64,000 nucleotides of DNA, from NCBI RefSeq assembly GCF_003704095.1, contig NW_020846655.1, positions 372,001 to 436,000 of the forward strand, read 5' to 3'. This document shows positions 4,201 to 48,000 of the stretch, piece by piece. Both the position numbers and the translations under genes were made by a program. Source of the stretch: Pocillopora damicornis (Eukaryota). The notes below the pieces were generated by a model. The model was not told the origin of the DNA and searched no databases. It saw only the letters and a program-made list of their open reading frames with translations. Within the stretch, counting starts at the first letter, position 1, and every line of letters begins with the position of its first letter.

Positions 4201-5612
4201 GTCCAGCTAAATCTCTACCAAGCGAGATAGATCAGTTCTTTCAGAAGGCTGGGGACGAGGGCGTGATCTTGGTGTCGTTTGGTACCGTGGTTGGAGCGCT
4301 GAGTGATTCATCACTGAAAATTATGGCTGAAACTTTCTCCAAACTACCACAGAAGATTATATGGAAACTTAAGCCCAATGGTATGGTTGTCGGAAAAATC
4401 GTATGGTTGTCGGATCCATTAGTAATTCTCCTTACTGTCTGCCATACGCTTCTTCTGATGTTAGTTCCTGGAATCTGGTATTGAATCAACTAATATTTTC
4501 CCCTAAGTAATATTTTTCTTTATTCTCATCACTTGTCTGTTTGATATTATGTTTATTTAGTAAGGAGAAATTCTGTCTTGGTCGCCTATGGGAGTAAAAG
4601 GGTTAATAGAGAATTTGAATGAAAGAAACATCATATATCTGTAGTGCTGACAGTTCAAAGGGCGATTGACTTCTTGAAGTATTCATTAAAAAACAAGACA
4701 GACGTTCAATGTAAAATAATTATAACAAGAGAATAATCTTCTGCTTATAACTATCGTATTGGTGCTACAACCGTAATTAGCTTCTAATTGAAGTTACTTC
4801 CCACAAACAATATTGACAAAGAACATGACGATCAAACGAAGATAATATGACAGGGTACCTAGTGAAGATGACAGTATTTGCGTGTACATTTTTCGCATAA
4901 CTCTTACACAACGTCGCAATTCATTATCTTCTTTCTCAAATTTGCAGACATTTCAAAAATAACCGTTAGCGACAACATCAAACTGCTGCCATGGCTACCC
5001 CAGAATGACATTCTTGGCCACCCTAAGACACGGCTATTTATCGCACACGCAGGAATCAATGGAATGCTAGAATCAACCTACCATGGTGTTCCTATGATAT
5101 GTTCACCTTTCTTCGGAGATCAACCACACAACGCCCAGACCGCAAAGCGGGCCGGGTTTGCTGAGGTGGTGGACCTTGAAGCCACATCAACAGAGGAGTT
5201 TATTAATTTGATACAGAAGGTTTTAACAGATCCAAGGTTAGTATCACAGAACTTAAATACTTTTTCATCAGTTCTTGGAAACATTCCTTCAAACTGATAC
5301 AGATATTAACAGTTGCAATTTGATTCATTTAGCTACCGAGAGAAAGCAAAGCGAATATCAAAATCTGTTCAGCTGTTGCCACGTTCACCCGTCATGGAAG
5401 CCGCTGATTGGGTGGAATATACACAGGCTCAAGGTGATTTACAGTACCTAAGACCACGTGGCCTGGATCTGCCGCTTTATAAGCTCTTCCTTCTTGATGT
5501 TTTGTCCGTCGTGCTCTTAGTTTCATTTGTTGTTTTATTGGTCATCATTATCATGTTTACATCTGTAATACGGTGTTTATTAGGGTCCTCAAGGAAAGAG
5601 AAGGTAAACTAA
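1225..5612 (+). CDS. UDP-glucuronosyltransferase (UGT/GT1 family), copy 1; exons 1225-1368, 2993-3602, 4171-4380, 4948-5236, 5333-5612 (~510 aa)
   Basis: Signal peptide followed by GKSHY (catalytic His region). UGT signature WLPQNDILGHPKTRLFIAHAGINGMLESTYHGVPMICSPFFGDQ. C-terminal TM helix and KEKVN dilysine ER-retrieval motif. All introns are GT-AG with matching phases (0,1,1,2). Confidence 0.93.
3679..3796. mobile_element. Degenerate MITE-like repeat related to the 11963-12158 element
   Basis: Shares the 3' end CGGACTTCGCC(G/A)AAAA..AGGGA.TG.TC.TAGTCT with 12122-12158. Confidence 0.5.
4410..4606. mobile_element. Copy of the ~200-bp TTAACCCTT-terminal MITE-like family, in UGT intron 3
   Basis: Ends in AGGAGAAATTCTGTCTTGGTC...GGGAGTAAAAGGGTTAA, matching copies at 22613-22825, 58303-58346 and elsewhere. 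Confidence 0.65.
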
Positions 5613-6290
5613 AACGAGATCGAGTTAGGAATTCATTGTTATTTTGGTTTACATGGCGACTTCTGAAATATAGTTACAGGGCTAACGCTCAGAACGTCAG
5701 CTTTAGAAACTCTTTACGGTGCCCAGTTTAAATTAGCAACTCACTTTATGATACCAAATAATCTTGACATACCGAAGAGTCGAGAACGAATTCTTCGTTA
5801 TCCTTTACTCTCTTTGATGACTGTGTTGAAATAAATATGAAGAGGCAAAAAAAATGTTGAAATTGACCTTTACGTAAAATCTACAATATCACCGGTGCTC
5901 ATACACAGGGTCGTAGAAAACATCAATACATACTTGCCTATCGTCTTTTCTCATTGCATTTTGTATCTAAAGTAAAAATTTTGTGGTGTAACAGACATTG
6001 TTACTCGGTGAGCCCGCGGTGTCGAGTGTCGAACTTGTCATGATACTAGTAGCTAAGGATGACGCACTTGAAAAGAATCTCTGGTAAACATGTTCCGCTT
6101 TTTAGGCTGCTGAACGGGTATCTTAATAAACACGTCTTGGATTGAGTTATATTTGGGTTATGGAAGAAATTACGGGACTGCCAATCTATACCACAATAAC
6201 TTCGTCTGTTACATGCAGCATGCAGAACTCAGAAGTGTATCAAGGATGTGTAATGTCTGTTTTCCTATTCATAATAATCATAGACTGAGA

Positions 6291-6917
6291 GAAACCTACC
6301 CTGTGCAATCTGATTAGTGCGACTAACATATCCTGCGCAATCTGACTGCTGCGAGCAACATAACCTACGCAAACTGATTGGTACGAGTAATATAACCTGC
6401 CCAATCTGATTGGTGGGAGCAGCACTGCTCTCGACAACTTAGATGTGATTATCATAATTTTCTTTGCCAAAGATATCTCAATTAAATGAATGGCCCTCAG
6501 GATATTAACTGCTCATTCAGATCACTGAATTAAAAGCCACCGCCGGGCCAGGTGAAAAACGTGATCATGTTGGTATTCTTTTGTTCAAAGTCTGTCATAT
6601 CCCCCTAAGGTTATCGTACAAGAACTTGTCGATGAACTGAAGTCCACGTCAGATCATATTGTCATTTATTTTCGAACTGTAAAAAAATTAATATAAGAAA
6701 TGAACTAAAAGATGAACAATGAAACGTTTCTTTTCAGCCTCTCGATATCGTCTAAAGCCTACTGATAAATTTCAAGGGTGAGTTGACGTTAGGTCTGTCA
6801 AAGGGCATAATAATTTGTTTCGTCTGTTATAATTACGTTCAGAGCTCTCAAACGAGAAAAATTTCTCACATTGGCTCCTTGTCAGCGGTATGGTCGCCAG
6901 ATAATGACATTATTTGT
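6291..6917 (+). repeat. Segmental duplicate of window 1-660 (upstream region of the second UGT unit)
   Basis: Colinear similarity from AACCTACCCTG to GATAATGACATTATTTGTA, ending abruptly where the LINE begins. Confidence 0.9.
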
Positions 6918-7853
6918 ATTGTTATGTGATCTTAGTGATGCGGAGATGGGAACTCCCATCCACCGGCTCCCCAGGTTGCGAATAGGGGAACGGCCTCTAG
7001 ATATAGAAGTTAGCTGCCAATAACCAATTAGCAGTGCAGGACAAAATAACAGGTCGCCCTTTGGCAAGGCGAAACACATGTCAGCCAGGTAGGATGTTGG
7101 ATAGCAGAATGATCGAAATACTGAAACGTTGGTTCAAGCTTCTAGAGGCGAGGCGATTCACAACAACCAATGTTGATTGTTTTGGCTAGGCACAAACGTT
7201 CTGATACAGAGTACTACTCACACTTGTATGGAGTAGCGACCGCAAGTGTCAAACCAGTCCTTGAAAGTATGAAATGACACAAAACCCAAGGCGTTCATCC
7301 CGCATCGCTCGTCGCGCGCTCAACTAAGGAGCGCGTACTGTAATGACGTTTCAGGTTGCAGTCGAAATCAACTACTGAAACCAAAGCGACCAAAACAAAA
7401 AAAGTCAATTCCAGACTGATGAAGGGAAAGAAAGACATCTTCATTGCGACCTTTAATGTCCAAACACTCCAGAAAGAAAGAAAGATACCTGAACTAATCG
7501 CCTCAGCTGATTCTACAAAACATGACATCATCTGTATACAAGAACACAGATTAATTAGGAATTTGCAACAAAAGAACAGATCTTTAGCAGCTGGAAACTG
7601 ATCACCTGCTCTACATGGAAGAATACTGTGAATGCGGCCACTGGAGGAACCGGAATACTATTTAGCCCACAAGCCTACAATGCTCTTACCAGTGCTGAAA
7701 TGATAACATCTAGAATTATGATAGCTACCTTCAATGGAAATCCTCAGACCACTATTATCTCCTGCTACAGCCCCACCAACATAAGCGATGAAACAGAAGT
7801 CAAAAAGTTTTACCAGGAATTGATATCAGTTACCAAACAAGTTTCCAAACACA
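6918..7853 (+). mobile_element. 5' part of a non-LTR retrotransposon (RTE-like): 5' UTR plus frameshifted APE endonuclease; truncated
   Basis: APE motifs IFIATFNVQTL, DIICIQEHR, GGTGILFS and TIISCYSPTN are split between ORFs 7356-7601 and 7628-7954, which are in different frames. No reverse transcriptase is visible. Confidence 0.85.
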
Positions 7854-8573
7854 ATTTATCACATAAACTGCGGTGTTATACAGAGATTTCCGGCCCTGGG
7901 AAAAGTCGTAACAACACACGTGAAAAGATATCGTATTTTTTCCACGTGTGTTGATATAGCCAATCAGCTGCTGACACGTCACTCGCCTTTGGCGCCCTTC
8001 GGTCAGGTTGATGAATGAACGGCAAAGCCTTCACGATTCTCAATACAAGTTGTTTGTCGGAGGGTTCTCGAATTATGGTGGCTAAAGCACTAAAAAATCC
8101 GTATCGCTGACATACAGTGAGGTTCAAACTTTCCAAGAAGGGAAAGAAAACCAGTATACTAAAAGAAAAACCGAAAGTTACTTATTCAGTGGCTTTGGTG
8201 TTAGCATTTCTCTCGGCTGAGAATGAAAATCGACAATTGGAAGATTTGCCACTGGTCGATTTTGGCCGTTTACCTGAAAGACTTCTTCCATCGGTAAGGA
8301 TAGAGTTAGCCGGCGCCAACGCAGTCTACGATTGTTATTCGGGGATTGTCGATTCATTAACTTTCATTCATTAACGAGATCGGCTTTTCTTCTCAGTAAG
8401 AGCTCTTGTGTTTATATGATAAACAAAATAATACATGGTTGCTTGTAGATATGGAACTTCTCTTCTCGTGTTCAACTCGACATCCCACTCGTTAACTGCG
8501 CTCACTCGTGAGCTATCGATTTAAACACTCGAAGAGAAATTCCATATCTACGCGCACCCATGTATTATTCTCT
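7854..8573 (+). mobile_element. Non-autonomous element with a terminal hairpin and a decayed Crypton/DUF3504-like coding remnant
   Basis: It interrupts the LINE. The peptide LVLAFLSAENENRQLEDLPLVDFGRLPERLLPSVR resembles the N-terminal helices of Crypton-type tyrosine recombinases. A long imperfect palindrome lies at ~8427-8570. Confidence 0.45.
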
Positions 8574-8705
8574 NNNNNNNNNNNNNNNNNNNNNNNNNNN
8601 NNNNNNNNNNNNNNNNNNNNNNNNNNNNNNNNNNNNNNNNNNNNNNNNNNNNNNNNNNNNNNNNNNNNNNNNNGCAAGTCATGATCTTCTCTCTCAAATT
8701 TGCAG

Positions 8706-9370
8706 ACATTTCAAAAATCACCGTCAGCGACAACATCAAACTGTTGCCATGGCTACCCCAGAATGACATTCTTGGCCACCCTAAGACACGGCTATTTATC
8801 GCACACGCAGGAATCAATGGAATGCTAGAATCAACCTACCATGGTGTTCCTATGATATGTTCACCTTTCTTCGGAGATCAACCACACAACGCCCAGGCTG
8901 CAAAGCGGGCCGGGTTTGCTGAGGTGGTGGACCTTGAAGCCACATCAACAGAGGAGTTTGTTAATTTGATACAGAAGGTTTTAACAGATCCAAGGTTAGT
9001 ATCACAGAACTCAAATACTTTTTCATCAGTTCTTGGAAACATTCCTTCAAACTTTTACCGATAGTGACAGTGGCAATCTTATTCCTTTAGCTACCGAGAG
9101 AAAGCAAAGCGAATATCAAAATCTGTTCAGCTGTTGCCACGTTCACCCGTCAAGGAAGCCGCTGATTGGGTGGAATATACACAGGCTCAAGGTGGTTTAC
9201 AGTACCTAAGACCACGTGGCCTGGATCTGCCGCTTTATAAGCTCTTCCTTCTTGATGTTTGGTCCGTCGTGCTCTTAGTTTCAGTTGTTGTTTTATTGGT
9301 CATCATTATCATGTTTACATCTGTAATACGGTGTTTATCAGGGTCCTCAAGGAAAGAGAAGGTTAATTGA
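8706..9370 (+). CDS. UGT copy 2, only exons 4 (8706-8994) and 5 (9091-9370) visible; 5' exons in the gap or absent
   Basis: Near-identical to copy 1 exons 4-5 with the same lengths (289 and 280 nt), an open frame, intact splice sites and a RKEKVN* end. Confidence 0.85.
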
Positions 9371-9902
9371 AACAAGATCGAGTTAAGAATCGTTCGTTAT
9401 CCTTACTGGTAAACTACTTCTGAAGTATGGTGACAGTTTGTAGCCTCTTCCGAACTCTTCTCTTGAATAATTGAGACCGAGTTTCTTACTTGAGGTACGT
9501 TGATTTTCATCCAACTCTTAATTATCTTTCCACCACTGACAATTACGAGCATATTTAAAGAAGTTGACGAGGTTTCGAAAAGATCTGATTCAACAGTTCA
9601 GAACGAATTCTTTGTCATCGCTCACGCCATTTTGATGTAAACTGTGTTGAAATAAGTATTGTCAATGCATTGAGTAAAGGTTAAAAAGCGTTCACTAATT
9701 TGTTACATTTTATGGTGAGCCCGCGCTGTCGATTGTCAAAACTTGTGATAACTGTGGATGAAACACTTACTATAAGAAGAATCTCGGGCAATTATCTGCA
9801 CGCGTATCCAAAAGAATACTTCTTTCGTTGAATTATATCAATTTTATTTGGATACCTCATTCATCATAATTTCATTTTTTGATTCCTAACTCCAAAGCTT
9901 TA

Positions 9903-10264
9903 TTTACATGGTCTCGGGTTCCCAAAACAACCCTCCCCTTCAAGACAACTTTAAGCAGCGTTCATTTGGAAGTTGTGAGTGGTAACAGTTGTAGCCTCGC
10001 TATTCTCTCTGGTGACAGCTGGGCAGGTTATATATCAAATAAAATTTGAGCCGCCTCGTCTCGGGCAGGCGAGCCGAAGTGTTTAGATGGGAAAAGGATG
10101 ACCCGAGGCGGGACAACTCGCCATCCCGAGCTGTCTCGCCCCAGAGACGAGTTCACCATTTTCATTTAGACATTGGTTGAATATTTCAGAGAAATAAATG
10201 AAGAGATAGCTCGACCAGGGTAACTCGGGGGAAGGGTTGTCTGGGGTATTCAAGACCATATAAA
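9903..10264. mobile_element. MITE with ~35-bp imperfect terminal inverted repeats
   Basis: TTTACATGGTCTCGGGTTCCCAAAACAACCCTCCCC ... GGGGAAGGGTTGTCTGGGGTATTCAAGACCATATAAA. Confidence 0.7.
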
Positions 10265-35139: not shown

Positions 35140-38100
35140 ATGACAGAGTGGAAATATTGTCGCTTTATAATGGTCATTGGTAGTTTAACTGTGCTCTTCC
35201 TGGTTGGGAGAGTGTTGGAGTTGCCCTTAAAGAAGACTATAATAGGTAAGCTTGGCAAAGCTGCTCATTAAGAAAGAGAGGTCTTTTATAAAAGTTTACA
35301 AGAGGAGGTATTTAGTTAAAGAATTTGAAGAATATCGTTGAAAAAAAAAACATATTATCTTGCCCTTTTAAGGGTACCAACAAAGTTTCTATAGTTTGGT
35401 AGTGCTACGAGAATGAAATGTACTCTTTTTGAAAAACTATCAGGTTTACATTCGAAAACCCGTTTTGATGTATTGGACAAAAAAGTTAATTCAAGTTGTT
35501 TTTATGTAGCCCCCCGGCGAGTTTTCGTTTCAAACTTAATCATGGATTTTTCAAGTGATAACGAATTGCATAATTCGTTGATACAGAGGCTAGTAATTCA
35601 TCGCTGATAAATTTGTCCTTTTGGGATAAAAACATTTGATGCCTGCAACTGCCACATCCTCGGAGACCATATCCCTCGGTAAAACCTTTGATTAGAGGTG
35701 AATAACTAAAAAAAATTCATGACAGTTATCAAGGAAAGTAAACTATAATCGCAGAATTTTTAATAATTCAAGTACTCTATCGTTTGATCTCTCTGCCTCC
35801 TAAGGGAAGTAGATTATTGTCGGTGAATTAAAACACCAAATCAGACATTTTTTGTAGCGGTAACACAGACTAACAACTCGGGGAAAAAAGGTTACGATTT
35901 TCTTCTTTTTCGGTTTTAAAAGAAAAACATTTATTTTGAAAATTTTGCAGAATCGGTCGGGTTTAATAATATTGCCATGCATTAACAAACTTTTCTTTCA
36001 GCGTATTCCTGTATTAGCTTGGAATATTCAGCGCAGCTGATCTCAAATGGTCTTTATTTTGACTATATCATTCTCAAGAGTGTCCAAGAAGTAATTTAAC
36101 CTTACAATATCAATACACTATTAAGCAGACTGGCGATAAGAAAATAAAAAAACCGAGGTAAATCATTTGATTAAAAAAAAAAAAGAAACAAACTCTCACG
36201 ACTAATTGCATAAGAAATGTCAGGTAGAAGGTTAGGATGAGTGCTGTTTACATCTTGGAAATGAAAGGGTCAAAGGCTCGCCGAAGCTTTTAGAAGTGCG
36301 CCTCTGTTTACCCTAAGTTGTGTTATGTACCGCTGGTCATCATACGAGCTATTTGCTTGTTTTAAAAGGAATACAACGCTATCTGTTGGAGGGTTCCTGA
36401 AATATACTCAGGATCTCTATTTCTCTGTTTAAAAAGTAAACATACATTGATAAAATCTTCTTGCTTTGTACAGGACCATTTGTCATTCATCCGGGTGGAA
36501 CCACAAAGAATAAAACGGTATCTATTTGTCTCTTGGTTAGAATCTCTTCTCACAGTTTTATTTTGTGTAAATCGACAACCTTTAAAATCCTAAAATATAA
36601 CATACATGGGGCAGTAACGAAACCAAACTTATTGGAAACAAAAGACAAATGGGTAGCGTTTATTTCCCAGCGAGATCATACAACTGTAACAGTGTATTCA
36701 AAGACCAGGTTGTCTCGGAAAGACTTCAGGTTACATGGTCATTTTTAACTCTAGCCGCCTTAAGTTCTTGGCGTGTTAGAAGAAAATGCTAACCGACAAG
36801 AGAGATGAATGAAAAAAGGTTCCTCAGTCTAAAAAACTAGAATACCTTTCTTGATCTGCAAAGTTCATCGATAAATTCCGTGAAAAGCCAGCTTAAAAAA
36901 AGGATGGTGTGCGAAATACTGGGCTGTGAGAATAATTTTCCATTCAGCGGGGGTTCCTGTATGTCAGGTTGCTCTATTATTTGAAGTTGGACATTTTATG
37001 GTAAAAATTCTGTAACGACAGAATTTCCCCTTACAATAACGATACAATGATGAGAATAAAGCAAGATATCAATTGGAGGATTAGCTGATCCAACACCAAA
37101 TTCTCAGAACTAACGCTATAAGAATTGTATGGCAGACAGTAAGGAGAATTACTTATGAGATGTGGGAGTAAAGGGGTCAGTAATGGAATATTCAAGGAAC
37201 CCTTGCTCGTACAGAAGCTCTTGTCGTGTTATTTACTTCAGCATACAGGGTGTCGGTTAACCTCTGATTCTGGTACGTTTCGCAAAGTTAGCAAGCTTTT
37301 TAAAATTACTTTTCCCTTTATGACAACGTTCACAACTAGTTTGGGTTTTTGGTATCAAATGGGCTCAATTTTAGGGTCTGTGCCCTCTTTACTCAACCTT
37401 TATTCAAAATTTACTGTCTTGCAACGCGGGGCCATCCTGTAAGACAGGGGTCCGCTGAATGCAAGTATAGAGGAGGACAATAGGGACTTTAAGAAAACCA
37501 CGACGGCAATGGCAACGAGAACGTCACGTAGTAAACAAAAGGTTTAGTGAGCAGAACAATGGCCCTGCACTTGCATTGTAAATTTCTTTGCGTCCTTTGA
37601 TGAAATGACCAAAATTTACGAACGTGAACGACAACAGCTAATTTTCCTAATTTTCTAACGCTGTGTTCCATATTTAGCTTAGACAGTGGGAAGAGTATCG
37701 AGATTCGTCATTTTTTTAACCGAAGTTGTCCACGGCGTCGCCGTCGGTCGTTTCTTAAACCCCGTATTATCAGGACTTCCGCTAAATGTAGGGTCAACTA
37801 CATACTGGTTTCACTGTAACCCCCAGACTGTGCCTATTAAACATCGGAACAAAAAGAAGTAGTCTACATAGTTTTGAGCACTCTTAACATTTGAAACTAT
37901 TGTCACTTTTCGTGTGCTCTCTGCCACATGTGACTACCGTTTTTACTCTTACAGTCAAACACAACCTTGGCGGTTAACGATGCTTTTACGAGAGCCGCCA
38001 AAACACAAGCAGCAAGAAAAAGACACCTGACACATTATTGCAGGACACATTCTAAAAATCCAGAACTACCTGATAAACAGCAGCTTGGGCAACTTCTTGT

Positions 38101-38848
38101 CGACGATGACGAAAATTATATCTTTTGCTCTGTTCCTAAGGTTGCCAGCACAACAATTAAGGGAATTTTGTTGAGTTTGCGAAATGACAGCGATAAAATT
38201 GAGAAATTTTCCGTGCATACGCCGAGTTTGTGGCAACACATGAGTCAATTCAACAAGACGGAAAACTCAAAACGTCTAATGACACATTTTAAGTTCCTTT
38301 TTGTACGTGAGCCGTTTCACCGTTTACTATCCGCCTACAAAGACAAATTCTGGGGGAGTAATCGAATATACACAAATGGTTTTCGCCGAATAATAGTCCA
38401 AGAATTCAGACCTCAAGATATTGAAACAATCAGCACTACAACTAACAATGTGACTTTCAATGAATTTCTCAGGTACATCTTAACTTATCCTGATTCCTTC
38501 ATCTCCCGCGATGACCACTGGAAACAATACGCAAATCTTTGTTTCCCTTGTGTCATTCAATTTGATTTCATCGGCCATTATGAAACGTTAGACGACGACG
38601 ACGCCACTTATTTACTAAAACTGGCGGGAATTGACGACCGCGTGGTTTTCCCGCCAATTCATTCGTCGAGAGCTGACGATGATTTCCTCAAATTCTATTC
38701 ACAAGTTCCACACCAGCTTATTTTTCGAATAGGAGAAATTTTTAAGAAAGATTTTGAAATGTTTGGTTATTCCTTCCCTGGACCCTTAAAAGAATTACTT
38801 ACAAACTATACAATGAATACTAACTCTGATTCTAGGAAACATGAGTAA
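35140..38848 (+). CDS. Golgi carbohydrate sulfotransferase (CHST8-14/HNK-1ST family); exons 35140-35245, 36474-36517, 37955-38848 (~347 aa)
   Basis: Type II TM anchor in exon 1. A 44-nt middle exon reconciles the phases. PAPS-binding motifs CSVPKVASTT and FLFVREPFHRLLSAYKDKF, plus DDHW, CFPC and FDFIGHYETL. Confidence 0.88.
37481..37768. mobile_element. MITE-like repeat with imperfect terminal inverted repeats in CHST intron 2
   Basis: TAGGGACTTTAAGAAAACCACGACGGC ... GCCGTCGGTCGTTTCTTAAACCCCGTA; a similarly ended element lies at ~18745-18972. Confidence 0.6.
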
Positions 38849-38987
38849 AACTCATATTTTTAAAGATCCATATTATTTTGTAAAGAGAGACGGATGACAA
38901 AGTATTTTTTCCACGCTGACTATAGGTACTAGGGGAATCAATACAACTACAACGAATGCTCTGTCTCTCAGAAGTGGAAAAATAAAG

Positions 38988-41900
38988 TCACTTCTTGAAG
39001 AAATCAGATATCATTCTCTGGTTGTTTGGTGTGGAACATTTCTTTTGATTTTTCGAGCTTGGTGATGGATGCTTTTCTCTGGGAGATAATAAACCTGCTT
39101 GACTTGAAGTTCGTTTGGTGGCCAAACCAGACGAGCACAATTTCGACTCTTCGAGGGGTGGCATGGGACGTTTGCTTTCAGACCCTTCGGACTCTGTTGT
39201 AGCAGATATGATTGTTTCAGATACCTTAACGTCATCATCTTTTTCAGAAGCCACCGTATCAAGTGAGTCCTTTTGAATGACAAGCGATTTTCTTAAAACG
39301 GAACTTTCATTCTTTTGTTTTTCTGGTGTTGTGGGAACTTTTGAGCAGAACCGTAACATGCCAGTGTTGGAGATCTTGCTTTTCCAATCGTACGCCATGT
39401 TTCCTATTTCCTTTGTCAAGTTCTTTGAGTTAATGATTGGCTAAAAGCGAACATGAATAGATTTGTCACCTGAAAAGCTCTGCAAATTTTGCCCCACATG
39501 TACTCGTTTTCAAATCATCTAGCCTAAATGGGTGTTTTACTTTAGTAAAAAGAGGCCAATTTCATCGAAAAGTTAGTGTTTCCTCAGGCAGGTCACAACC
39601 GAGATATTAGACATAAAATAAACTTTACAGGAGAAAAAATAGAAAAAATGACTTCAAACACAAATTTCTCTTCGAAAGCTTCTGACCCTACCTGATCTTC
39701 ATGATCTGTTCCCCACATAAAATAAATTGGTCCTTGTATTGAATTCTGCAATTCAGGCGAGCGTAAGCGCTTTCCCCAACTGTGGATAGAAAAAAAGAGT
39801 TACTGATCGAGAGGGAGTTATAAGTGAAGTCCCCACCTCCCTTGTTAAGGCAAATGCGAGACAGTTTGTCTCCCCAAACCGTGAGACCCGGGAGCTGATC
39901 AGGCTTCTGTTAAGGGTGAAACGTTGAAAAAACAGAGCTAAAAAAAATGTAGGTGGAATGAAAAGAGGAAGATGAATTGGTCCACTGCTGGGCGTTAAAA
40001 CACTCACGTAAACAACTTTGATATCAAACATAGGACTACCATAACAAGCAAGACTCGTAAATACATTGACAAAGAAAGATAACAACTGCTCCTACAAACC
40101 TCTTGATCTCCTCTTCACTTAAGACCCGTTGTTTCCCAACTCTGCGATGCACGCGGACATAAGCAAAGTCACATGACCCAAGCGCCATGATAATCGGTAC
40201 CACTCCTCCACAACCTGACTCCTGACAAAAGAACCAACTCTTTATCCTCTCAGACTAATTTTGATGTCCAATTTTTTATTTTTATTTTTACTCACCCTAA
40301 CAAGACTTAGTATGTTTAGGATGAACACAAAAGAGTGATGAAAGCTGAAAAATTTAACAATGATGGAAGCTAAGGGAAAATTTTTTCTTTTTCAGCGTTG
40401 GTAGTAAAATCAGTGGAACAATAAAATAATGACTCCATATAAGAATCAATCAAACAGTTATATAGAAAACATAATATGCGTCCTTGTAAAGTAAACGTTC
40501 TTTAAGACGTATAATCATCAAACTTGATATGTTCATGTTACTTGTAAAATGTACATAAGCCTACAGGCCCACAACTGCCTGATTTCATTACAACTTGTTC
40601 CTGTTTGAATAGCATGAAGCCAATAGAGGGTGTAGGGAGTGAAAGTACTTAGCCACTAACCCCCACCCCTCCCCTCTGCTGGATGTGAAGAAGGTCTATT
40701 ACGGCTAAACCCTTTCCAAAAGGCTTCTGACAGCTTCCAAGTATTCATTTGTACTCCAGGGTGCCCAAGTAAATAAGTAAGTAGGTAGATGTTCCAGCAG
40801 TATATTAACAATTACTCAAAAAAGTTGGGTAAATAGTTGTGGATATTTACCAAGCCACAAAACAGCAAGATAAATATCCACCACTTTCACCAACACTGAG
40901 GTGTTTTTTTTTAGCATAAACCACACAGATGGTGGGAAATTAAACTCTTGATGGGCAATTTTGATAGTACTTTCTACTCAATTCCAAACCAGCCATTCAA
41001 TGCACCCTAAAAGCACTACTTGCCTGTATGGTATGTATTAAATCATAATTTGTAATGCTAATCTAACATAAGTGTATCCTGAAAAAGTGTAGCTATGATC
41101 AAAGGGATTTGACTGTCAAGATAAATGAAAGTACCTTCCCTTGTCCTTCTGCTGATTTGTTCTTTTCAACATAGAGCTGTAAACAAATTGGACATGGAAT
41201 TTCAGAATTGATAAATGAACTCATTTTATGATACATTCCCAAAACCATCCAGCAAAGTTGGAACTAAAAACTGAGATTTCTATTGTGTCAAAGGTAGTTG
41301 TCATGACTACACCTGCTTGAACAATTGTCTGAATATTTTCAGTTTCCCAATACAAATAGAAAGGATGGAGGATAAAACTAGGAAAAAGTGCACAGCTATA
41401 GAGGGCTGCAATAAGTGGTCACCAAAAATATTCAGAATATAGAGCAGAGGAAGAAATTTACAAATATGACCAATTTGTAACTTAAATATCATCTAAATAG
41501 AACATAAACAGTAATTAACAAGCAAAATTTTGAGGTAGGTTAAGAATAAGAGAACCCCTAAAAGTGATTACAAAATGCTTCTCTAACCTCACTTTGCAGT
41601 TCATCAGCAACCACCAGAACTTATATGAAAAATAATCACAAAAAATAATTGATCTTTTATAAAAATGCACTGTTACAATATATAGTCATGTAGAGTCTAC
41701 ACCTGAACAAAGTTCTAGCACACAAACTGCTGGAGCATGTCTTGGTTTCCATAGCATAAAGAGGAATCATAGAAGTATGGGTGTGTCCCTTAGATGGGGC
41801 ACTTGTCAATCCCAAATTACTCTTTGTATCTACCCATGTTTGAACTGTGGCAATTCTTTGACACTCACTTCTGGGATTTTTCAAGAAATATATAAGCAGG

Positions 41901-44802
41901 AAAACAATGTAACATAAAAGGAAAGTACTCTCTACCTCTGAATAAAAAGCAATTCAGGCCATCAAACTCTTATGAAAGAATTTTATGATTTGTGATCTGT
42001 CATTCATATTCATGGATGGTGAGGGGCTCTTGTGAAAGTTTAGTGTCATACCTTTGTACAATACACTTTAGCCCCACCTAGAAACTCAGGAACTTTTAAT
42101 CTTTTAATCTTTTCCTTCTAAGGAAGGTGTTGTATTACAGGCATGATAACATCTCAAAAGTAATCCCATTTGCCTCAGTTCTGGAGCAAAAATTTAGCCT
42201 CTAGCATTCTTCTAATTTTCTTATTCCAAATTACAAGTTGCTGTACTCACCAATATTGTGCTGTTTCAACCAGTCCAGGGTTGTATGTAAATTCTCAGTT
42301 GTAAACCAAACTCTTGAGCGAAATTCTACAGCCATATGATAATTCACACCCAGAAATTTTCTACACTCCATAATGTGCTCCTTATTTTCATTGGTAGGAT
42401 GAAAACCTAAGTGAAACTGAAGGATGCAGAGTGATTTTACAAAGAAACAAAGCGATAAATATGAGATTGATCAAGCCTTATTAGCTGTAAGCAGGCTCAA
42501 TTGGACAGCATACTCATTTCTCTTGTGCTTAGACAACAATGTTCTTGTTATGTCACCAGGTACACTTGACACCATTACGATGGTTTTCTGGTTTTTCCTC
42601 AAATCTTTTTCCTGGTTTTGATTAATTGTTAAAATTGATAACAGGGCTTAGCATATTCAATTCTGTTTGTAGTCATACTTTTCTTTGTGTTTCTTTAGCT
42701 ATATCTTTAGGCCCCCTTCACCTCAAAATAACAAACAGTATGACTTTGAGAATGTTTTTGAATTCATAATATAATTTTTTACTTTAGCAAGATTGGAAAG
42801 AAATTTAAAGAAATGGCTGTACATGTACATTAATGACATGTACATTAATTCAAAACCCTAACATGCATAATAAAGGAATATCTAGTAACAGAATAACTGG
42901 CTTTTGTAGATCATCATTTAAAATGCACATTCTACAACTAATCAAAATCAAGGAACATGAAGATATTACTTGGTGGATGCTTCATTTGTTAATTTACAAC
43001 AATTATCACCAGGTTACCTGGAAAATGACAACTCCCAATTTGTTTTTCTGATAAGCAGGTAGAATAGCAGAGTTGAATCTGTCCCAGAGCTTCTGTTTTT
43101 GCAGTAAACTTAATTCCTCCCAGGTGATTGACATTTGTCCTCTAATGACATTCTGTGGAAGCTCATCTCTGACAACATGTGGTAGTGCTGACACAGAGAT
43201 TGACTGAAAAACCAGAGCAGTTTCAATCCCTCTAGTCTTTCTGAGAGGTTTAACCCTTAAACTCCCAACATCTGATTGTTAATTCTCTCCTCTAGCTGCC
43301 ATACAATTCTTAAAATAAATGGGACTTAGCAGCATACAGTTCAAGAGGTGACTCTTTTTCACTGTTTCCAGGTCAGAGTGGAATTTTAAAAAGTTAGTTT
43401 TTGCAGAGAGGGAAAAACTTAAAGACCTGGAGAAACACCCTGGAGCAAGGACAAGAAACAACAACAACAAACTCAACCAACATATAACACCAGGTCTGGG
43501 AATCAAATCTGGGCCACAGTGGTGGGAGGTGAGTGCTTTCACTACCACGCCATCCCTAATTCCCTGAATTCTTGTAAATTAGTTGTGATAACTTTGTGTT
43601 GGATCAGGATATCACCCTCTACCAAATAAGTTTGAGTATTCTTGGTACCTGTTTGCTGGATAATACATGGATATAAGGAAAAGTTACATGTTAACCACTT
43701 CAGGAAGTTAAAGGGTAAATATTAAAGCTCTCACTTGTTAGTTAATTTAGCAATATAGTCTCATGAGCTATAAATCTTTTACTATGTGAGTCAAGTCCTC
43801 TTAAGTCTTCACACACTATAAGCTCAAAAATGTAAGAGTTAAAATCCTTGTTCTGAAGTGTAAAGAGACTAGGAATGTATTTAATTCCTTTGAATAGAGA
43901 ACTGATGCACAGCAAGATCCAGAAGATTTGCCAGGAAACCCATCTATCCTTCTTGATAGAGTAATATACTGTAGGAGCCTAGTATCTTGCTCAAGAACCA
44001 AACCAAATAATTCCTTCTAAGTCTGAAATAAGAATTTTTCATTCAGAGTCTGAATATTGGATATTAGGCAACCATGTGACATGTGTCATTTCAAGTCAAG
44101 TACACTTGATGATGTTTTGTCTGGTGATCAGTATAACGAATTTGGGTCAAGAGTTCAACAGCATAAGCCCTAGCCCAGCTATTGTGTTATGTTACCAAAT
44201 AACTTGTATGACCTTTCAAAAAGATTATATAAATAACCTGTTTGAGGGGCAAACAATGTAGCTCAAGCTAAGGGGGACTAATAAGCCCCATGGTCTAGAG
44301 CACAGCCCCACCAGATACAAAATACAATCACATCAGGGGAAGTAAAAATACTGTCACAAAAACTCTTCTACCCAAGGTAATAAATTTGTTGGAAAAGAAT
44401 CACGACACTAGAGGCTTCCAATGCCCCTCGCTCCGCCTCCTCCACCCACCCAGTTGTAGTGATACCCCGCTGTGAAATTCATTATCATGTCCAACAGCTT
44501 ATAGCTGTAACTTCTATGGTAACTCTTACCTTCCTTGTAAATAATCCAAATGCTTTGAAGTGGAACTTGAAACCCGTCGGAACGCACTTGAGCCATTTTT
44601 CCACTCTCATTGGACTAGGAATCGCATAATTACTCGTGTCGCATTCAACACAAGGGAAAAATCTAGAATAATGCAGTAAACGGTCCTCTGTTGTCTTAAC
44701 TGAAGCTGGATAAAACCTTCCGCACTTCACAATCGACGAATCCGACCAACCACAAGTTCCCTGGAGAACTTTCCCCACGAGATCTGCACTATTCCCCGCC
44801 AT
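38988..44802 (-). CDS. DUF72 (YecE/UPF0759-family) protein with a disordered tail and C-terminal PIP box; exons 44802-44530, 43203-43018, 42416-42251, 41619-41588, 41176-41135, 40221-40100, 39779-39692, 39440-38988 (453 aa)
   Basis: DUF72-type motifs in order: QGTCGWS, RFYP, RLLHYSRFFPCVECDTSNYAIP, WLKCVPTGFKFHFKA, KLGVVIFQF, AVEFRSRVW, LVVAD, FAYVRVHRR. Eight exons join stop-free with consistent phases (1362 nt). Confidence 0.88.
43250..43719. mobile_element. TTAACCCTT-terminal MITE containing a tRNA-derived SINE (43312-43566, minus strand)
   Basis: Termini TTAACCCTTAAACTCCC ... GGAAGTTAAAGGGTAAA. The insert has an A-box-like GGGATGGCGTGGTAGTGAAAGCACTC and a B-box-like GATTTGATTCCC, and is flanked by an AATTCTT duplication (43305-43311 and 43567-43573). 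Confidence 0.75.
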
Positions 44803-45003
44803 TTTCTTGCTAGTACTTAGTCTCTATACTAGTCTCCCCTTAACGATTGCACCTGGAGCATTGGAAAGAAAATTGATTCCAATATGGTGGACGTGTCAAC
44901 ATATTTGGGTCTTTCGTGTCTACAAGTTATTGTGAAACGTTGTTCCCCAATATTCTGAAGTAAAACCCAGAAACATGGAGTTTTGTTATTGAATTATTCC
45001 CTG
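44803..45003. promoter_or_regulatory. Bidirectional promoter between the DUF72 gene and GORAB
   Basis: Divergent ATGs are 201 bp apart. YY1-like AAAATGGCGG (minus strand, overlapping the DUF72 ATG) and AATATGGTGGAC (plus strand, 44881). Confidence 0.7.
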
Positions 45004-48000
45004 ATGTCATCTTGGGCCGGATTCACAGACGAGGAGCTCCTCCGGCTAAGACAGACTGCAGGAGAAGATGGGACAGCTCTAGGAAGCCTTAGAAAGTCAG
45101 CGATAAACACTGCAAAACGACAACGACCTCGTGAGAAAGTACGATCAAGAGGTACATCTTCAGGGAAACTAGATTCCGGGAAGAAAGAAGGAAATGAAGA
45201 CCAGGGCGCGAGAGATTGCGCTCAGTTTGCGCCGCAGAACACAAGCTCCAAATCTTACAGTGGTCGCTCAACTTCGCGACTTGATTCCAGGGAAGAAGAA
45301 AAGGAAAATTCTTCTCCAGAGTGTGAAAGGCGGGGAAAAAGTGTAAGCCAAGTGAAAGAAAGGAATTCTCTCTCTGAAGAATCGTCTTTAGAGAACAAGT
45401 CTCTGAAGAACGCCAATGATCAACAAGGAAAAGCTTTCGAGGTGGATGATGGCCATCAAGAGCAAAGCGGTATACTTACGGATAAAGAGGTGGAAATCGA
45501 TCTCCCTAATATAATCGACGAGAATGATAGGTAGGATTAGGGAAAGGTATTATTAAAGTTTTATTTGATCAGTTTACTGTTTTAGTTGCTGTTGAGGGTA
45601 CTTGCCAGTTTGCGAACATTTGAACCCACATTCCATAATTGAAAGATTGGTCTCCTAGTGACACATTTAATTAAAAGTAATTTTACTTCTTTTGCCATTG
45701 AACGCACTTTATGCCTTGTATGTTCGTCTTGTTAACTGCTTTCAATAAGTGCTGGACATTTTAGATAACCTATACAGAAAATATGGTGAGTAATCAAGAA
45801 ATTGTTTTGGTTTTTACACAATACCTGTAAGTGCAGTACATTCAATTTGGCAGAGGTACATGAAAATTTTTCGAATGTGCAGTATTAACAAAAAAAAAGT
45901 TGGGACACTTTAATCAAAAGACCAAAGTGATAAAAAAATGATTTTTCCTCCTTTTTGTTTCATTTTACACTTGTAGCCTCCTCCTACCCCCAGGTTTTCC
46001 ATATTTTGTGCCAACAAAGCAACTCTTTGAGATGAAAGCACATGATGGGGGGGAATGGGGTGAAAGTCAATAAGGGGTGCACTTTGTCCAAAATGCAAAG
46101 CAATAGGTGTTACATCCCTCAATGCTTACTGCAGTTGTCAGACATCTGATAAAGTTTGCTTATTTCTAACAGTTTGTGACTAACTAAAGATGCTGCTTCC
46201 CAGTCAAGTCTATTTAGATTTTCTTGAAAAAATTAAGTTCTCTTTTTGAGCAATCACAGTCTCTGTATCCAAGTGAGGACCTATCCAAGAAGACAAATTA
46301 TTAAACATATATTAATCAAAATAAACCTATCAATACTTTTAATGACATGTGAAATTCTCTAAACCTTTTGCATAGAATACAAGCAATTGAATTGTCAGCT
46401 TTGGAAAAGATGCAAGAAAAACAGAAACAGATTGAACAGGAAAATAAAAGAAAGAAAGCAGCTCTACAGGAAACAATAAAGAAAAGGTATTCATTTACTA
46501 GTTCACAAATTCAAAAAAGGGCAAGTCAAACATATTGATTAATGATACTGTCTTTCCCTGATTAACTTTTAAAGGTTCGATTACAGGGGAATCAGTACAG
46601 GATAATAAGTGCCCCCATCAATTAAGCCTTCTTCCAATAAGCACCCCTCCTTTCAGCTGAAATTTTGAATGAGTTAAGTTAAGTTAAGGATTATATAGGT
46701 TTTAAGTCTGAGGGGAACATATTGTCGCATACAACAACAGGGTGAATATATCACATACAAAAATAGGAGAAAGCAGAGGGAATTTTCTAGACTGTGTAAT
46801 GATTATATTTTGTGGTGTGAAAAGTTTGCATGAACAGAGCACTCATCAAGGAGGTCATTCATCACAATGGTTTCATTTATTACCAGTAACTTTTCTTCAG
46901 TTGTGATTTGTGCCTCTCATGTTGTCTTATTTTGTTTATTTTTTGTTTGGTTAGATATCAGAAAACCCAAGCAGAAGCACACACTCTTAGTTTAGTTCAG
47001 AAAGAGTTGAGCCATCTTGACAGTCTACTGTCTGCTGATGTAGCTATTCTTCGAGACAAGATAGAGGAGAGCAGTAGAGATTTCCTTAGTGCACAGTAAG
47101 TGAATAAGCACACTAACCAGTCTAAGTTTGTCAAGATGTTTCACAATGAATTCTCAGTTTTACATAGCACTTTTTCTCTAAATTTTATAGGAGTAAATTG
47201 AAAAATGCCAATCTGAATTAACTGCAGCATTGGCAACAGATTTTGTATTTCGGCAGATTTCTAAGATGTTTTATTATTGACTCTTTAATCATCTCTCTGC
47301 CCCTAATGTCACTTCAATGAAGCGTTATCAAATTAGACAAGGGGACCAATCAAATTTAGCAGTTCCAATGGATAACATCTCATAAGATCACAGAAACATA
47401 CACAGTTGCTTAAATTTATTTAAATCAGGCATAAATTTGTTGCCATACTATTTTGTGTTCTACTTGTCTACCATCTTGAGTCTGACATTTGACAGTTCCT
47501 AAACATTTCCTCGCTCAAACAAAAGTTCACATTCTGTCTTTAACAGGACTCTTATTGAAAGTATATCAGTATCATTGACCTCAACTGCACTCAATCTTTG
47601 ACATGAAAGTCTGCTAAACAATTGTAAAAAGTTTAAATTTTTGATTGCCAAACATGACACGTGTCCACGCTTAGATGAAAACAGTGGTAATGTTCACAGC
47701 AGGACAAACTACTTGAAACTTTATTTTCAGAAAGAGGTACGAAAAGGCAGAAAAAGAGTTTGTGGAGGCGAAGATGGATTTACACAGAAAAACGGAAAGG
47801 AAAGATTTGCTAACAGAGCACCTGTATACCATTATTAGAGAAAATGAATTAAGAAAGGCAAAAAAACTCGAAGAACTCATGGTAAAGCTTAATGTCGGGA
47901 ACGATTTTGGCTTTTCAGCACAAAATGAGGGTGATGAAGCCATTATGGAACAGAACAATTCAGAAATTCCTGTACTATCAGAGGATAATGCGAGAAGAGA

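What the first reader, a model, noticed from the sequence alone, without database searches (positions are those of the whole stretch)
38988..44802. Intron-containing animal DUF72 (YecE-like) gene ending in a PCNA-interacting PIP box: candidate undescribed PCNA-coupled DNA repair factor
Seen: eight GT-AG exons, two of them only 32 and 42 nt, splice into a stop-free 453-aa protein. The first ~320 aa carry DUF72 motifs, followed by ~120 aa of low-complexity Ser/Lys/Glu-rich tail and the terminal sequence NNQRMISDFFKK*. Known: DUF72 (Pfam PF01904, E. coli YecE) is a TIM-barrel family of unknown function found mainly in prokaryotes. As I recall, comparative genomics has placed it in DNA-damage gene neighbourhoods (SRAP/YedK, ImuB/DnaE2, uracil-DNA glycosylases), and I know of no member in human, fly or nematode. 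Inference: an enzyme domain tethered by a flexible linker to a terminal PIP box is the layout of clamp-recruited repair enzymes, including the eukaryotic SRAP protein HMCES. This would be eukaryote-side evidence that DUF72 acts on DNA and could mark a repair route absent from model animals.
Basis: partly seen in the sequence, partly recalled or inferred. Interest (0 to 1): 0.9.

Follow-up and report, generated by a model that had tools for sequence, protein, structure and literature searches.

The report
Coral DUF72 enzyme with PCNA tail
A real, transcribed eight-exon coral gene encodes an enzyme of the still-uncharacterised DUF72 family whose floppy tail ends in a textbook PCNA-docking motif that its relatives across eukaryotes also carry, which points to an unstudied DNA-repair enzyme that appears, from a limited survey, to be absent from sea anemones and was not found in bilaterians.

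Summary
On the minus strand, eight GT-AG exons (273, 186, 166, 32, 42, 122, 88 and 453 nt) give a stop-free 453-aa protein ending in QRMISDFFKK. RNA contigs from four runs support all seven junctions. The product is letter-identical to RefSeq XP_027052775.1 (Pocillopora damicornis, "uncharacterized protein"). Residues 31-312 match Pfam DUF72 (E 3e-37). The model is a confident TIM barrel (Z 27.7 to the DUF72 crystal structure 1VPY) followed by a disordered tail of about 117 aa. The only aromatic residues in that tail are the two Phe of a canonical PIP box.

The motif is a family trait. Of 91 tailed homologues, 72 carry a PIP-like core in their last 25 residues (1.3 expected from shuffled tails). 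Named carriers include a sponge, Capsaspora, a choanoflagellate, amoebozoans, green algae, ferns and stramenopiles. Three homologues add ubiquitin-binding-type zinc fingers. Some bacterial DUF72 proteins end in a beta-clamp-like QxxLL.

Best reading: a sliding-clamp-tethered DNA-lesion enzyme, ancient in eukaryotes. PCNA binding and the chemistry remain untested, because the complex predictor was unavailable. The gene is already annotated, and DUF72 in corals was tabulated in 2018. I found no description of the PIP architecture.

The parts
38988..44802 (-). Coding region of the DUF72-PIP gene (8 exons, 453 codons plus stop). The 5' UTR continues beyond 44900.
   Evidence: the product is identical to P0235 = XP_027052775.1
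44530..44802 (-). Exon 1 coding part (273 nt, residues 1-91). It holds the start of the DUF72 domain.
   Evidence: Pfam PF01904 E 3.7e-15; joint 43203|44530 in 4 runs
43018..43203 (-). Exon 2 (186 nt)
   Evidence: joints 42416|43018 and 43203|44530 in 4 runs
42251..42416 (-). Exon 3 (166 nt)
   Evidence: Pfam PF01904 E 1.9e-4, profile positions 89-136; joints
41588..41619 (-). Exon 4, micro-exon of 32 nt
   Evidence: joints 41176|41588 and 41619|42251 in RNA contigs; frame check
41135..41176 (-). Exon 5, micro-exon of 42 nt. It encodes part of a low-confidence surface loop.
   Evidence: joints 40220(+1)|41134(+1) and 41176|41588; pLDDT about 62 for residues 221-240
40100..40221 (-). Exon 6 (122 nt)
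39692..39779 (-). Exon 7 (88 nt)
38988..39440 (-). Exon 8 (450 nt plus stop). It encodes the end of the barrel, the proximal motif, the disordered linker and the PIP box.
39414..44712 (-). DUF72 (PF01904) TIM-barrel domain, residues 31-312, spliced across exons 1-8
   Evidence: E 3.1e-37; AlphaFold2 model with block-mean pLDDT mostly above 90 for residues ~11-330, except the 221-240 loop (~62); Z 27.7 to 1VPY and 25.1 to 1VPQ; all 62 columns that are at least 80% conserved are kept
39345..39368 (-). Proximal PIP-like motif, residues 328-335 (NTGMLRFC). It is conserved in eukaryotic homologues as [GS]-[ILM]-x-x-[FMLA]-F and is degenerate (F-C) in corals and the sponge.
39021..39341 (-). Disordered Ser/Lys/Glu-rich linker, residues 337-443, with four S/T-P sites (341, 422, 429, 440) and the basic patch KNQKK (433-437)
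   Evidence: block-mean pLDDT 43-63; composition; 15-40% identity between corals
38997..39020 (-). Canonical PIP box QRMISDFF (residues 444-451), followed by KK and the stop
   Evidence: short helix at 447-450 with pLDDT 71-77; conserved in orthologues

Best explanation
The gene encodes a nuclear enzyme that acts on DNA and is tethered to the sliding clamp. The N-terminal ~320 residues form a DUF72 TIM barrel that keeps every family-conserved residue. These comprise acidic and His residues (E53, E184, D214, H258, E271), basic residues (K83, R186, R256, R260) and several Trp/Tyr, so the domain is probably catalytically active and metal-dependent. A disordered linker of about 105 aa carries a canonical C-terminal PIP box (QRMISDFF). 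This motif would insert its short helix into the hydrophobic pocket of PCNA under the interdomain connecting loop, bringing the barrel to replication forks or repair patches. There the enzyme would process a DNA lesion, most likely a damaged or abasic sugar or a UV-type lesion. That guess rests on analogy with the Endo IV / UVDE TIM-barrel nucleases and on the prokaryotic gene neighbourhoods. Shown here: gene structure, transcription, DUF72 membership, the disordered tail, the exact PIP consensus, and conservation of the motif across eukaryotes. Inferred: PCNA binding, nuclear location, DNA as substrate, and the chemistry.
For: The gene structure and its splicing are shown. DUF72 membership and fold are shown. 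All conserved residues are kept. The PIP consensus is exact, sits at the extreme C-terminus of a disordered tail, and contains the tail's only aromatic residues. In 72 of 91 homologues with C-terminal extensions, [ILMV]xx[FYW][FYWL] occurs in the last 25 aa, against a mean of 1.3 and a maximum of 5 in 500 tail shuffles. The full Q-containing motif occurs in 17, against 0.07 expected. The linker diverges while the motif stays. The same layout is seen in named species: a sponge, Capsaspora, a choanoflagellate, Amoebozoa, Diphylleia, a jakobid, green algae, bryophytes, ferns and stramenopiles. Ubiquitin-binding-type zinc fingers lie between the barrel and the terminal motif in three homologues: zf_UBZ at E 1.9e-5 in Cymbomonas, a CPIC..H..C pattern plus a RanBP2 finger in Didymoeca, and a RanBP2-like pattern in P0078. 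This is the PIP+UBZ layout of translesion polymerases. A subset of bacterial DUF72 proteins ends in QxxL[LF]-COOH after a variable linker, which resembles a beta-clamp-binding motif (6 of 27, 9 of 80). The literature reports DUF72 enriched next to PolB2 together with SRAP (PMC11791011) and modelled as an Endo IV-like DNA enzyme (PMC3828134; PMC4939058). Three bacterial loci I inspected had UvrC, a DinB-family gene or a DNA_alkylation repair gene within 5 kb. This last point is anecdotal.
Against: Beyond the DUF72 structures, the fold matches are generic TIM barrels at Z 11-14, where sugar isomerases/epimerases, glycosidases and Endo IV are tied. No Pfam nuclease family matches. Most homologues lack the Q of the PIP box, so at family level the motif is only 'PIP-like' and could serve Rev1, MLH1 or another reader of FF motifs. 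The homologues are related to one another, so the counts are not independent events. No clear classical nuclear localisation signal exists in the Pocillopora tail; the KKKR-type patch of other corals reads PREKH here. The bacterial neighbourhood check covered only three loci with no statistics.
Confidence: 0.7

Rival explanations
1. The terminal (and proximal) FF motif is a 'PIP-like' motif that docks on a partner other than PCNA, such as the REV1 C-terminal domain (RIR-type FF motifs) or MLH1 (MIP box). The enzyme would still work in DNA damage tolerance or mismatch repair, but it would not ride on the clamp.
For: Most homologues lack Q at position 1, for example ITSFF, GIKRYF and SIERFF. Only 17 of 91 have the full Q motif. 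Two FF-type motifs per protein recall the mixed PIP and RIR sets of Y-family polymerases (my own knowledge of those families).
Against: The coral, sponge and Capsaspora motifs are full canonical PIP boxes with the hydrophobic residue at position 4 and the correct spacing. The h-x-x-a-a spacing is kept in 72 of 91 homologues, and RIR motifs do not require it.
Confidence: 0.12
2. The DUF72 barrel does not act on DNA lesions. It would be a sugar or metabolite isomerase/hydrolase or an RNA-directed enzyme, and the tail serves only for nuclear import, turnover or scaffolding.
For: Apart from DUF72 itself, the nearest solved folds are mostly sugar isomerases, epimerases and glycosidases. No experiment has assigned any activity to a DUF72 protein (PMC11791011).
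Against: A clamp-docking motif conserved across eukaryotic supergroups, ubiquitin-binding fingers in some members, clamp-like C-termini in some bacteria, and published linkage to PolB2 and SRAP are hard to explain for a metabolic enzyme. Conserved Lys/Arg and Trp/Tyr around the barrel mouth suit a polyanionic substrate. That reading is inference.
Confidence: 0.12
3. The gene is bacterial or algal contamination, or a recent horizontal transfer without function in the coral.
For: DUF72 is common in bacteria: 9 of 14 control genomes have it. It is reported absent from sea anemones (PMC6214176).
Against: The gene has seven spliceosomal introns, is spliced in polyA RNA from four studies, and sits beside an animal-type sulfotransferase gene. 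It is a single locus in the genome. Orthologues occur in five coral genera and a sponge, forming a clade with 99% SH-aLRT support. All eukaryotic sequences are separated from the sampled bacteria by a branch with 100% support, and the plant sequences follow the organismal order.
Confidence: 0.02

Closest known systems
Prokaryotic DUF72 / UPF0759 proteins (E. coli YecE, B. subtilis YunF, T. maritima TM1631 = PDB 1VPQ, E. faecalis EF0366 = PDB 1VPY/1ZTV)
   Same: They share the catalytic TIM-barrel domain (Pfam E 3e-37; Z 27.7 and 25.1; about 21-26% identity) and the same conserved residues. Their function is likewise not assigned by experiment.
   Different: The prokaryotic proteins are about 250-320 aa and end with the barrel or a short extension. 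The coral protein adds a disordered tail of about 117 aa with a canonical PIP box, and its gene has seven introns. Some bacterial members instead end in a QxxLL motif that resembles a beta-clamp-binding motif.
HMCES (eukaryotic SRAP protein)
   Same: The layout is the same: a lesion-recognising catalytic domain shared with bacteria, then a disordered tail with a C-terminal PIP box. SRAP and DUF72 genes are reported as co-enriched next to PolB2 (PMC11791011).
   Different: The fold (SRAP) and chemistry (thiazolidine crosslink to abasic sites) are unrelated. HMCES is present in human. The HMCES comparison rests on my own knowledge and was not tested here.
Endonuclease IV (Nfo/Apn1) and UV-damage endonuclease UVDE
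   Same: They are TIM-barrel, metal-dependent DNA-lesion endonucleases. DUF72 has been modelled on them in the literature. In one search, M. tuberculosis Endo IV scores Z 11.3 and the ASFV AP endonuclease Z 12.0.
   Different: There is no sequence-family match. The structural scores are no better than those for sugar isomerases. DUF72 has fewer conserved His residues than the three-metal site of Endo IV.
Enzymes with a C-terminal PIP box (FEN1, POLD3/p66, RNase H2B, DNA polymerase eta)
   Same: They have a canonical Qxx[ILM]xx[FY][FY] at or near the extreme C-terminus of a flexible tail, flanked by basic residues.
   Different: Their catalytic domains are different. The coral protein ends two residues after the FF pair, so it has no residue at +4 and no TD pair, which means it is not a PIP degron.
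PIP + UBZ proteins (Pol eta, Pol kappa, Spartan, WRNIP1)
   Same: The Cymbomonas, Didymoeca and P0078 homologues combine zinc fingers of ubiquitin-binding type with the terminal PIP-like box.
   Different: The coral protein itself has no zinc finger. The UBZ calls are just below the Pfam threshold (24.6 versus 25.6 bits) or rest only on a pattern.

Membership tests
DUF72 / UPF0759 (Pfam PF01904) | Match to the Pfam profile above the gathering score, over the full profile length | tested here: met
   129.2 bits against a cut-off of 25.3, E 3.1e-37, profile positions 1-215 of 217. Exon 1 alone scores 57 bits.
DUF72 / UPF0759 (Pfam PF01904) | TIM-barrel fold like the solved members 1VPY and 1VPQ | tested here: met
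   AlphaFold2 model with mean pLDDT 81.7 and the barrel mostly above 90. Foldseek E 1.6e-17 to 1ZTV. VIA Z 27.7 and 25.1 over 245 aligned residues.
DUF72 / UPF0759 (Pfam PF01904) | Retention of the family's conserved (presumed catalytic or substrate-binding) residues | tested here: met
   All 62 columns conserved at 80% or more in 118 homologues carry the consensus residue in the Pocillopora protein.
PIP-box PCNA partners | Sequence consensus Q-x-x-[ILM]-x-x-[FY]-[FY] | tested here: met
   Q444-R-M-I-S-D-F-F451
PIP-box PCNA partners | Motif lies in an accessible, disordered region and tends to form a short helix | tested here: met
   The tail has block-mean pLDDT 43-63. The last 13 residues reach 71-77, with a helix at 447-450.
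PIP-box PCNA partners | Motif conserved in orthologues while the flanks diverge | tested here: met
   named species
PIP-box PCNA partners | Physical binding to PCNA that depends on the hydrophobic and aromatic residues | not testable with these tools
A cnidarian-like full-length PCNA (L003:191-985) and the coral's own multi-exon PCNA gene (L001) were located for such a test.
PIP degron (CRL4-Cdt2 substrates) | TD at PIP positions 5-6 and a basic residue at +4 after the box | tested here: not met
   Positions 5-6 are SD, and the protein ends at +2.
UBZ-containing PCNA partners | C2H2 or C2HC ubiquitin-binding zinc finger in the tail | tested here: not met
   The coral tail has no Pfam zinc finger and no CxxC..H..H/C pattern. 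Such fingers occur only in three distant homologues.
AP endonuclease family 2 (Endo IV) / UVDE | Sequence-profile match, or a structural match that stands above other TIM barrels | tested here: not met
   No Pfam match even at E 10. Z 11.3-12.0, tied with sugar isomerases and glycosidases.

The most novel reading that the evidence does not exclude
DUF72 enzymes are an ancient class of sliding-clamp-tethered DNA-lesion processors. In eukaryotes they have been tethered to PCNA since about the last common ancestor, through one or two PIP-like boxes and sometimes ubiquitin-binding fingers. In some bacteria they are tethered to the beta clamp through a C-terminal QxxLL. They would define a fork-associated repair route that I did not find in bilaterians or seed plants (fungi were not examined) and that is therefore invisible in the standard model organisms.
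Probability: 0.45. Interest if true: 0.85.

Novelty: new variant of a known kind. Interest (0 to 1): 0.68.

Why it matters
DUF72 is a large family, present in 9 of 14 reference prokaryotes and in many eukaryotic lineages. Crystal structures have existed since 2004, yet the family has no assigned activity. A conserved clamp-docking tail gives the first eukaryote-side argument about where the enzyme works: on DNA, at PCNA. It also turns an open annotation problem into simple experiments, namely PCNA pull-down with FF>AA controls and lesion panels on the purified barrel. If the reading is right, reef corals, sponges, the unicellular relatives of animals, mosses, ferns and many algae keep a replication-coupled repair activity that I did not find in bilaterians or seed plants. 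This bears on how sessile, sun-exposed organisms protect their genomes.

Tried and rejected
- **Joined model not searched.** Exons were searched by reference. The join was made only inside scripts, to check frame and stops and to compare with database proteins. The full-length analyses then used database proteins P0154 (98% identical) and P0235 (identical).
- **Complex prediction.** The job (PCNA L003:191-985 plus the last 50 residues of the window's protein) came back as not available, so there is no verdict on binding.
- **Coral PCNA.** The coral's own PCNA gene is split into many short exons, so it could not be supplied by reference.
- **The search for related loci.** The broad alignment A1 failed for lack of a conserved stretch. 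The bacterial alignment A2 worked but returned only Chloroflexota and Actinomycetota. Archaeal DUF72 C-termini were therefore not examined.
- **Pfam scan of alignment A1.** It exceeded the size limit, so selected long homologues were scanned instead. P0031 (3536 aa, with a subtilase) looks like a merged gene model.
- **Protein Atlas.** It returned only DUF72 clusters.
- **Structure searches.** They could not separate nuclease-like from isomerase-like barrels.
- **Readings rejected.** The PIP-degron reading was rejected (no TD pair, no +4 residue). A UBZ in the coral protein was rejected.
- **Other checks.** No repeats were found within the gene region. No paper mentions the locus identifiers.

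Full report
**What is in the sequence**

The finding lies on the minus strand. Reading the three minus-strand frames and applying GT-AG rules gives eight exons:

| Exon | Window coordinates | Length |
|---|---|---|
| E1 | 44530-44802 | 273 nt |
| E2 | 43018-43203 | 186 nt |
| E3 | 42251-42416 | 166 nt |
| E4 | 41588-41619 | 32 nt |
| E5 | 41135-41176 | 42 nt |
| E6 | 40100-40221 | 122 nt |
| E7 | 39692-39779 | 88 nt |
| E8 | 38988-39440 | 453 nt with the stop |

The total is 1362 nt, or 453 codons and a stop with no internal stop. All seven introns begin GT and end AG, and the protein ends NNQRMISDFFKK. An in-frame stop lies 18 nt upstream of the ATG.

**Transcript support**

One search for public runs found polyA or oligo-dT RNA libraries of corals and marine samples that hold the stretch. 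Laying the contigs of four runs from four studies on 38901-44900 returned exactly the seven predicted joints, each CT..AC on the plus strand. One 3551-nt contig carries all eight exons in order. These are assembled contigs, so they show that the spliced form exists. They do not show its strand or level.

**How the spliced model was handled**

The join was made only inside scripts, to check frame and stops and to compare with database proteins. Exon 1 alone hits Pfam DUF72 at E 3.7e-15 and exon 3 at 1.9e-4. A phmmer search of exon 1 against 1.84 billion representatives, followed by a search with a coral homologue, returned full-length relatives. Cluster look-up then gave P0235, which is letter-identical to the spliced product. 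P0235 is XP_027052775.1 / RMX38645.1 of Pocillopora damicornis, named "uncharacterized protein LOC113679982", and UniRef calls it "DUF72 domain-containing protein". The window is therefore most likely P. damicornis, whose assembly here has 234 Mb in 4393 contigs. The gene model is already public. All full-length analyses used P0235 or its 98%-identical relative P0154.

**The protein**

- P0235 matches PF01904 at E 3.1e-37 over residues 31-312 and matches nothing else, even at E 10.
- AlphaFold2 with a 118-sequence alignment gives mean pLDDT 81.7. Residues ~11-330 form a confident eight-stranded barrel (block-mean pLDDT mostly above 90). The loop encoded by the micro-exons is low-confidence. 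The tail is disordered (block-mean pLDDT 43-63), and confidence rises again to 71-77 over the last 13 residues, with a short helix at 447-450, that is, inside the PIP box.
- Foldseek and an exhaustive structural alignment put the DUF72 crystal structures far ahead: E 1.6e-17, and Z 27.7 and 25.1.
- The next tier (Z 11-14) is a continuum of TIM barrels. It includes MbnB, sugar isomerases and epimerases, glycosidases, the ASFV AP endonuclease (Z 12.0) and M. tuberculosis Endo IV (Z 11.3). The fold therefore does not decide the chemistry.
- All 62 alignment columns conserved at 80% or more keep the consensus residue in the coral protein. These include E53, K83, Q153, E184, R186, D214, R256, H258, R260, E271 and several Trp/Tyr. 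The enzyme is probably active.
- The 117-aa tail is rich in Ser, Lys and Glu. It has four S/T-P sites and one basic patch, and its only aromatic residues are F450 and F451.

**Is the PIP box more than chance?**

Within corals (Orbicella, Montipora, Acropora and one unnamed coral), identity to the Pocillopora protein is 73-82% in the domain, 15-40% in the linker and 75-92% in the last 12 residues. The homoscleromorph sponge Corticium ends in QLKVTSFF.

Across the family, 91 homologues have a C-terminal extension of at least 30 aa. Of these, 72 carry [ILMV]xx[FYW][FYWL] in their last 25 residues, against a mean of 1.3 and a maximum of 5 in 500 shuffles of the same tails. The full Q-containing motif occurs in 17, against 0.07 expected. 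Several of the remaining 19 have weakened versions such as IARMF or LLAAF. The sequences are related to one another, so these are not independent events, but the tails are otherwise unalignable.

Named carriers of the same layout:

- Holozoa: Capsaspora, the choanoflagellate Didymoeca
- Amoebozoa: Balamuthia, Phalansterium (Planoprotostelium also has the family, but its tail carries a GNAT domain and no PIP-like end)
- Discoba: the jakobid Andalucia
- Green algae: Cymbomonas, Chlamydomonas eustigma, Picochlorum; and the streptophyte alga Spirogloea
- Land plants without seeds: a liverwort, a moss, a lycophyte, ferns
- Stramenopiles: Ochromonas

Ulva, Ectocarpus, Diphylleia and Micractinium have the family but showed no terminal motif in the sequences available (some are partial).

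Three homologues also have zinc fingers between the barrel and the terminal motif:

- Cymbomonas: Pfam zf_UBZ at E 1.9e-5, one bit below the threshold
- Didymoeca: a Rad18-type CPIC..H..C pattern plus a RanBP2 finger (E 1.6e-5, below threshold)
- P0078: a RanBP2-like pattern

PIP plus a ubiquitin-binding finger is the signature of proteins recruited to ubiquitinated PCNA. That statement rests on established knowledge of the Y-family polymerases and Spartan.

**Origin**

- The coral genome has a single DUF72 locus. The gene has seven introns and lies tail-to-tail with an animal-type Sulfotransfer_2 gene.
- In a 118-sequence tree, corals and the sponge form a clade with 99% SH-aLRT support.
- In a tree of named taxa rooted on 16 bacterial sequences, all eukaryotes sit on one side of a branch with 100% support. 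The green lineage follows organismal order, and no well-supported branch contradicts holozoan monophyly. This was the quick search; the careful one did not finish.
- The pattern fits ancient vertical inheritance with many losses. Only the nearest bacterial groups were sampled, so the donor question stays open.
- Ying et al. 2018 (PMC6214176) list DUF72 in Table 2, among the Pfam domains found in every scleractinian studied but in neither sea anemone, as I read the flattened table. My searches likewise found no anemone, hydrozoan or bilaterian member. Absence in human, fly or nematode was not tested directly.

**What is known**

Only 12 papers in the library contain the word DUF72.

- TM1631 was modelled as an Endo IV-like DNA enzyme (PMC3828134; PMC4939058).
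- A 2025 study found DUF72 and SRAP genes enriched beside PolB2, called the function unassigned and the fold close to UVDE (PMC11791011).
- That 2025 study is also the only paper holding both DUF72 and PCNA, and it does not link the two.
- No paper mentions the locus identifiers.

I found no description of the eukaryotic PIP-tailed architecture.

**Two additional observations**

1. Directly after the barrel, eukaryotic homologues share a second PIP-like motif, [GS]-[ILM]-x-x-[FMLA]-F. In corals and the sponge it reads GMLRFC or NLLQFC, with the second aromatic replaced by Cys. The family may therefore carry two clamp- or partner-docking motifs. In corals the distal one is the canonical box.
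2. Six of 27 bacterial relatives, and 9 of 80 Chloroflexota or Actinomycetota loci, end exactly in Q-x-x-L-[LF] after a variable low-complexity linker. This looks like the bacterial beta-clamp-binding motif (QL[SD]LF, and MutS QMSLL, from my own knowledge). The crude chance expectation is about 0.05 in 80. The QMRLL of shorter members is part of the last barrel helix and does not count. This is a lead, not a result. If real, clamp tethering arose in this family in two domains of life.

Three bacterial loci that I inspected had UvrC, a DinB-family gene or a DNA_alkylation repair gene within 5 kb. This is anecdotal.

**Mechanism and verdict**

I commit to a PCNA-tethered DNA-lesion-processing enzyme, with confidence 0.7. 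The barrel would be a metal-dependent hydrolase or lyase acting on a damaged sugar or base in DNA. The flexible linker gives it reach, and the C-terminal PIP box docks it on PCNA.

- **Shown:** gene, splicing, family, fold, conserved residues, disorder, the motif and its conservation.
- **Inferred:** PCNA binding, nuclear location, substrate and chemistry.

The main rivals are that the FF motif reads another partner (REV1 or MLH1; 0.12) or that the substrate is not DNA (0.12). Contamination or recent transfer is effectively excluded. The one in-silico binding test on offer, complex prediction, was unavailable.

The gene itself is already annotated, and its presence in corals has been tabulated. 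The new element is the architecture and what it implies for a family that has been without a function for twenty years. I therefore class it as a new variant of a known kind (clamp-recruited repair enzymes) and score interest at 0.68.

Noticed in passing
window 39345-39368 (-), residues 328-335: A second, proximal PIP-like motif lies right after the barrel. It reads NTGMLRFC in Pocillopora and [GS]-[ILM]-x-x-[FMLA]-F in most eukaryotic DUF72 homologues, and some short-tailed homologues have only this one. It may be a second docking motif or a structural cap.
   Followed up: partly
loci L053-L056, L062, L064, L073, L106, L113; proteins P0207, P0211, P0218, P0221, P0222, P0224: A subset of bacterial (mostly Chloroflexota) DUF72 proteins ends exactly in Q-x-x-L-[LF] after a variable low-complexity linker. 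This resembles the beta-clamp-binding motif. P0117 ends QAQLDLG.
   Followed up: partly
loci L081-L129 (Actinomycetota): Many actinobacterial DUF72 proteins end in an acidic Leu-rich LLDLDLPE or LDLELG-type tail of unknown meaning.
   Followed up: no
P0074 (Didymoeca costata), P0160 (Cymbomonas), P0078: Homologues carry Rad18-type CPIC..H..C, UBZ3-like and RanBP2-type zinc fingers between the DUF72 barrel and the terminal PIP-like box. P0085 (Planoprotostelium) carries a GNAT acetyltransferase domain instead.
   Followed up: partly
window 41619 (first base of exon 4, minus strand): The genome encodes V209, whereas nearly all transcript-derived proteins and three of four RNA runs have G209. This is one base difference at the exon 3/4 junction. 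The aligner shows it as a joint shifted by 2 nt (41617|42249 instead of 41619|42251).
   Followed up: partly
window 43101-43300 (intron 1) and 40742-40903 (intron 5): Summed RNA contig depth is very high (5,000-10,000 at 43101-43300), and many contigs run on into unrelated sequence. These are short repeated elements shared with many other transcripts and are not part of this gene's mRNA.
   Followed up: no
window 37967-38848 (+): A single-exon ORF of 293 aa matches Pfam Sulfotransfer_2 (E 2e-50). It is convergent with the DUF72 gene, with only about 140 bp between the two stop codons, and RNA contigs run across both 3' ends.
   Followed up: partly
window 44983-45534 (+): An ORF of 183 aa with no Pfam match starts about 180 bp from the DUF72 ATG on the other strand. 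This suggests a divergent gene with a possible shared promoter.
   Followed up: no
L001 = G000:C3576:563910-567236: The coral's PCNA gene is split into many short exons (first coding exon about 109 aa). L003:191-985 is a full-length 265-aa cnidarian-like PCNA cDNA from a metatranscriptome. It is 74% identical over the N-terminal domain and could be used for a docking test.
   Followed up: partly
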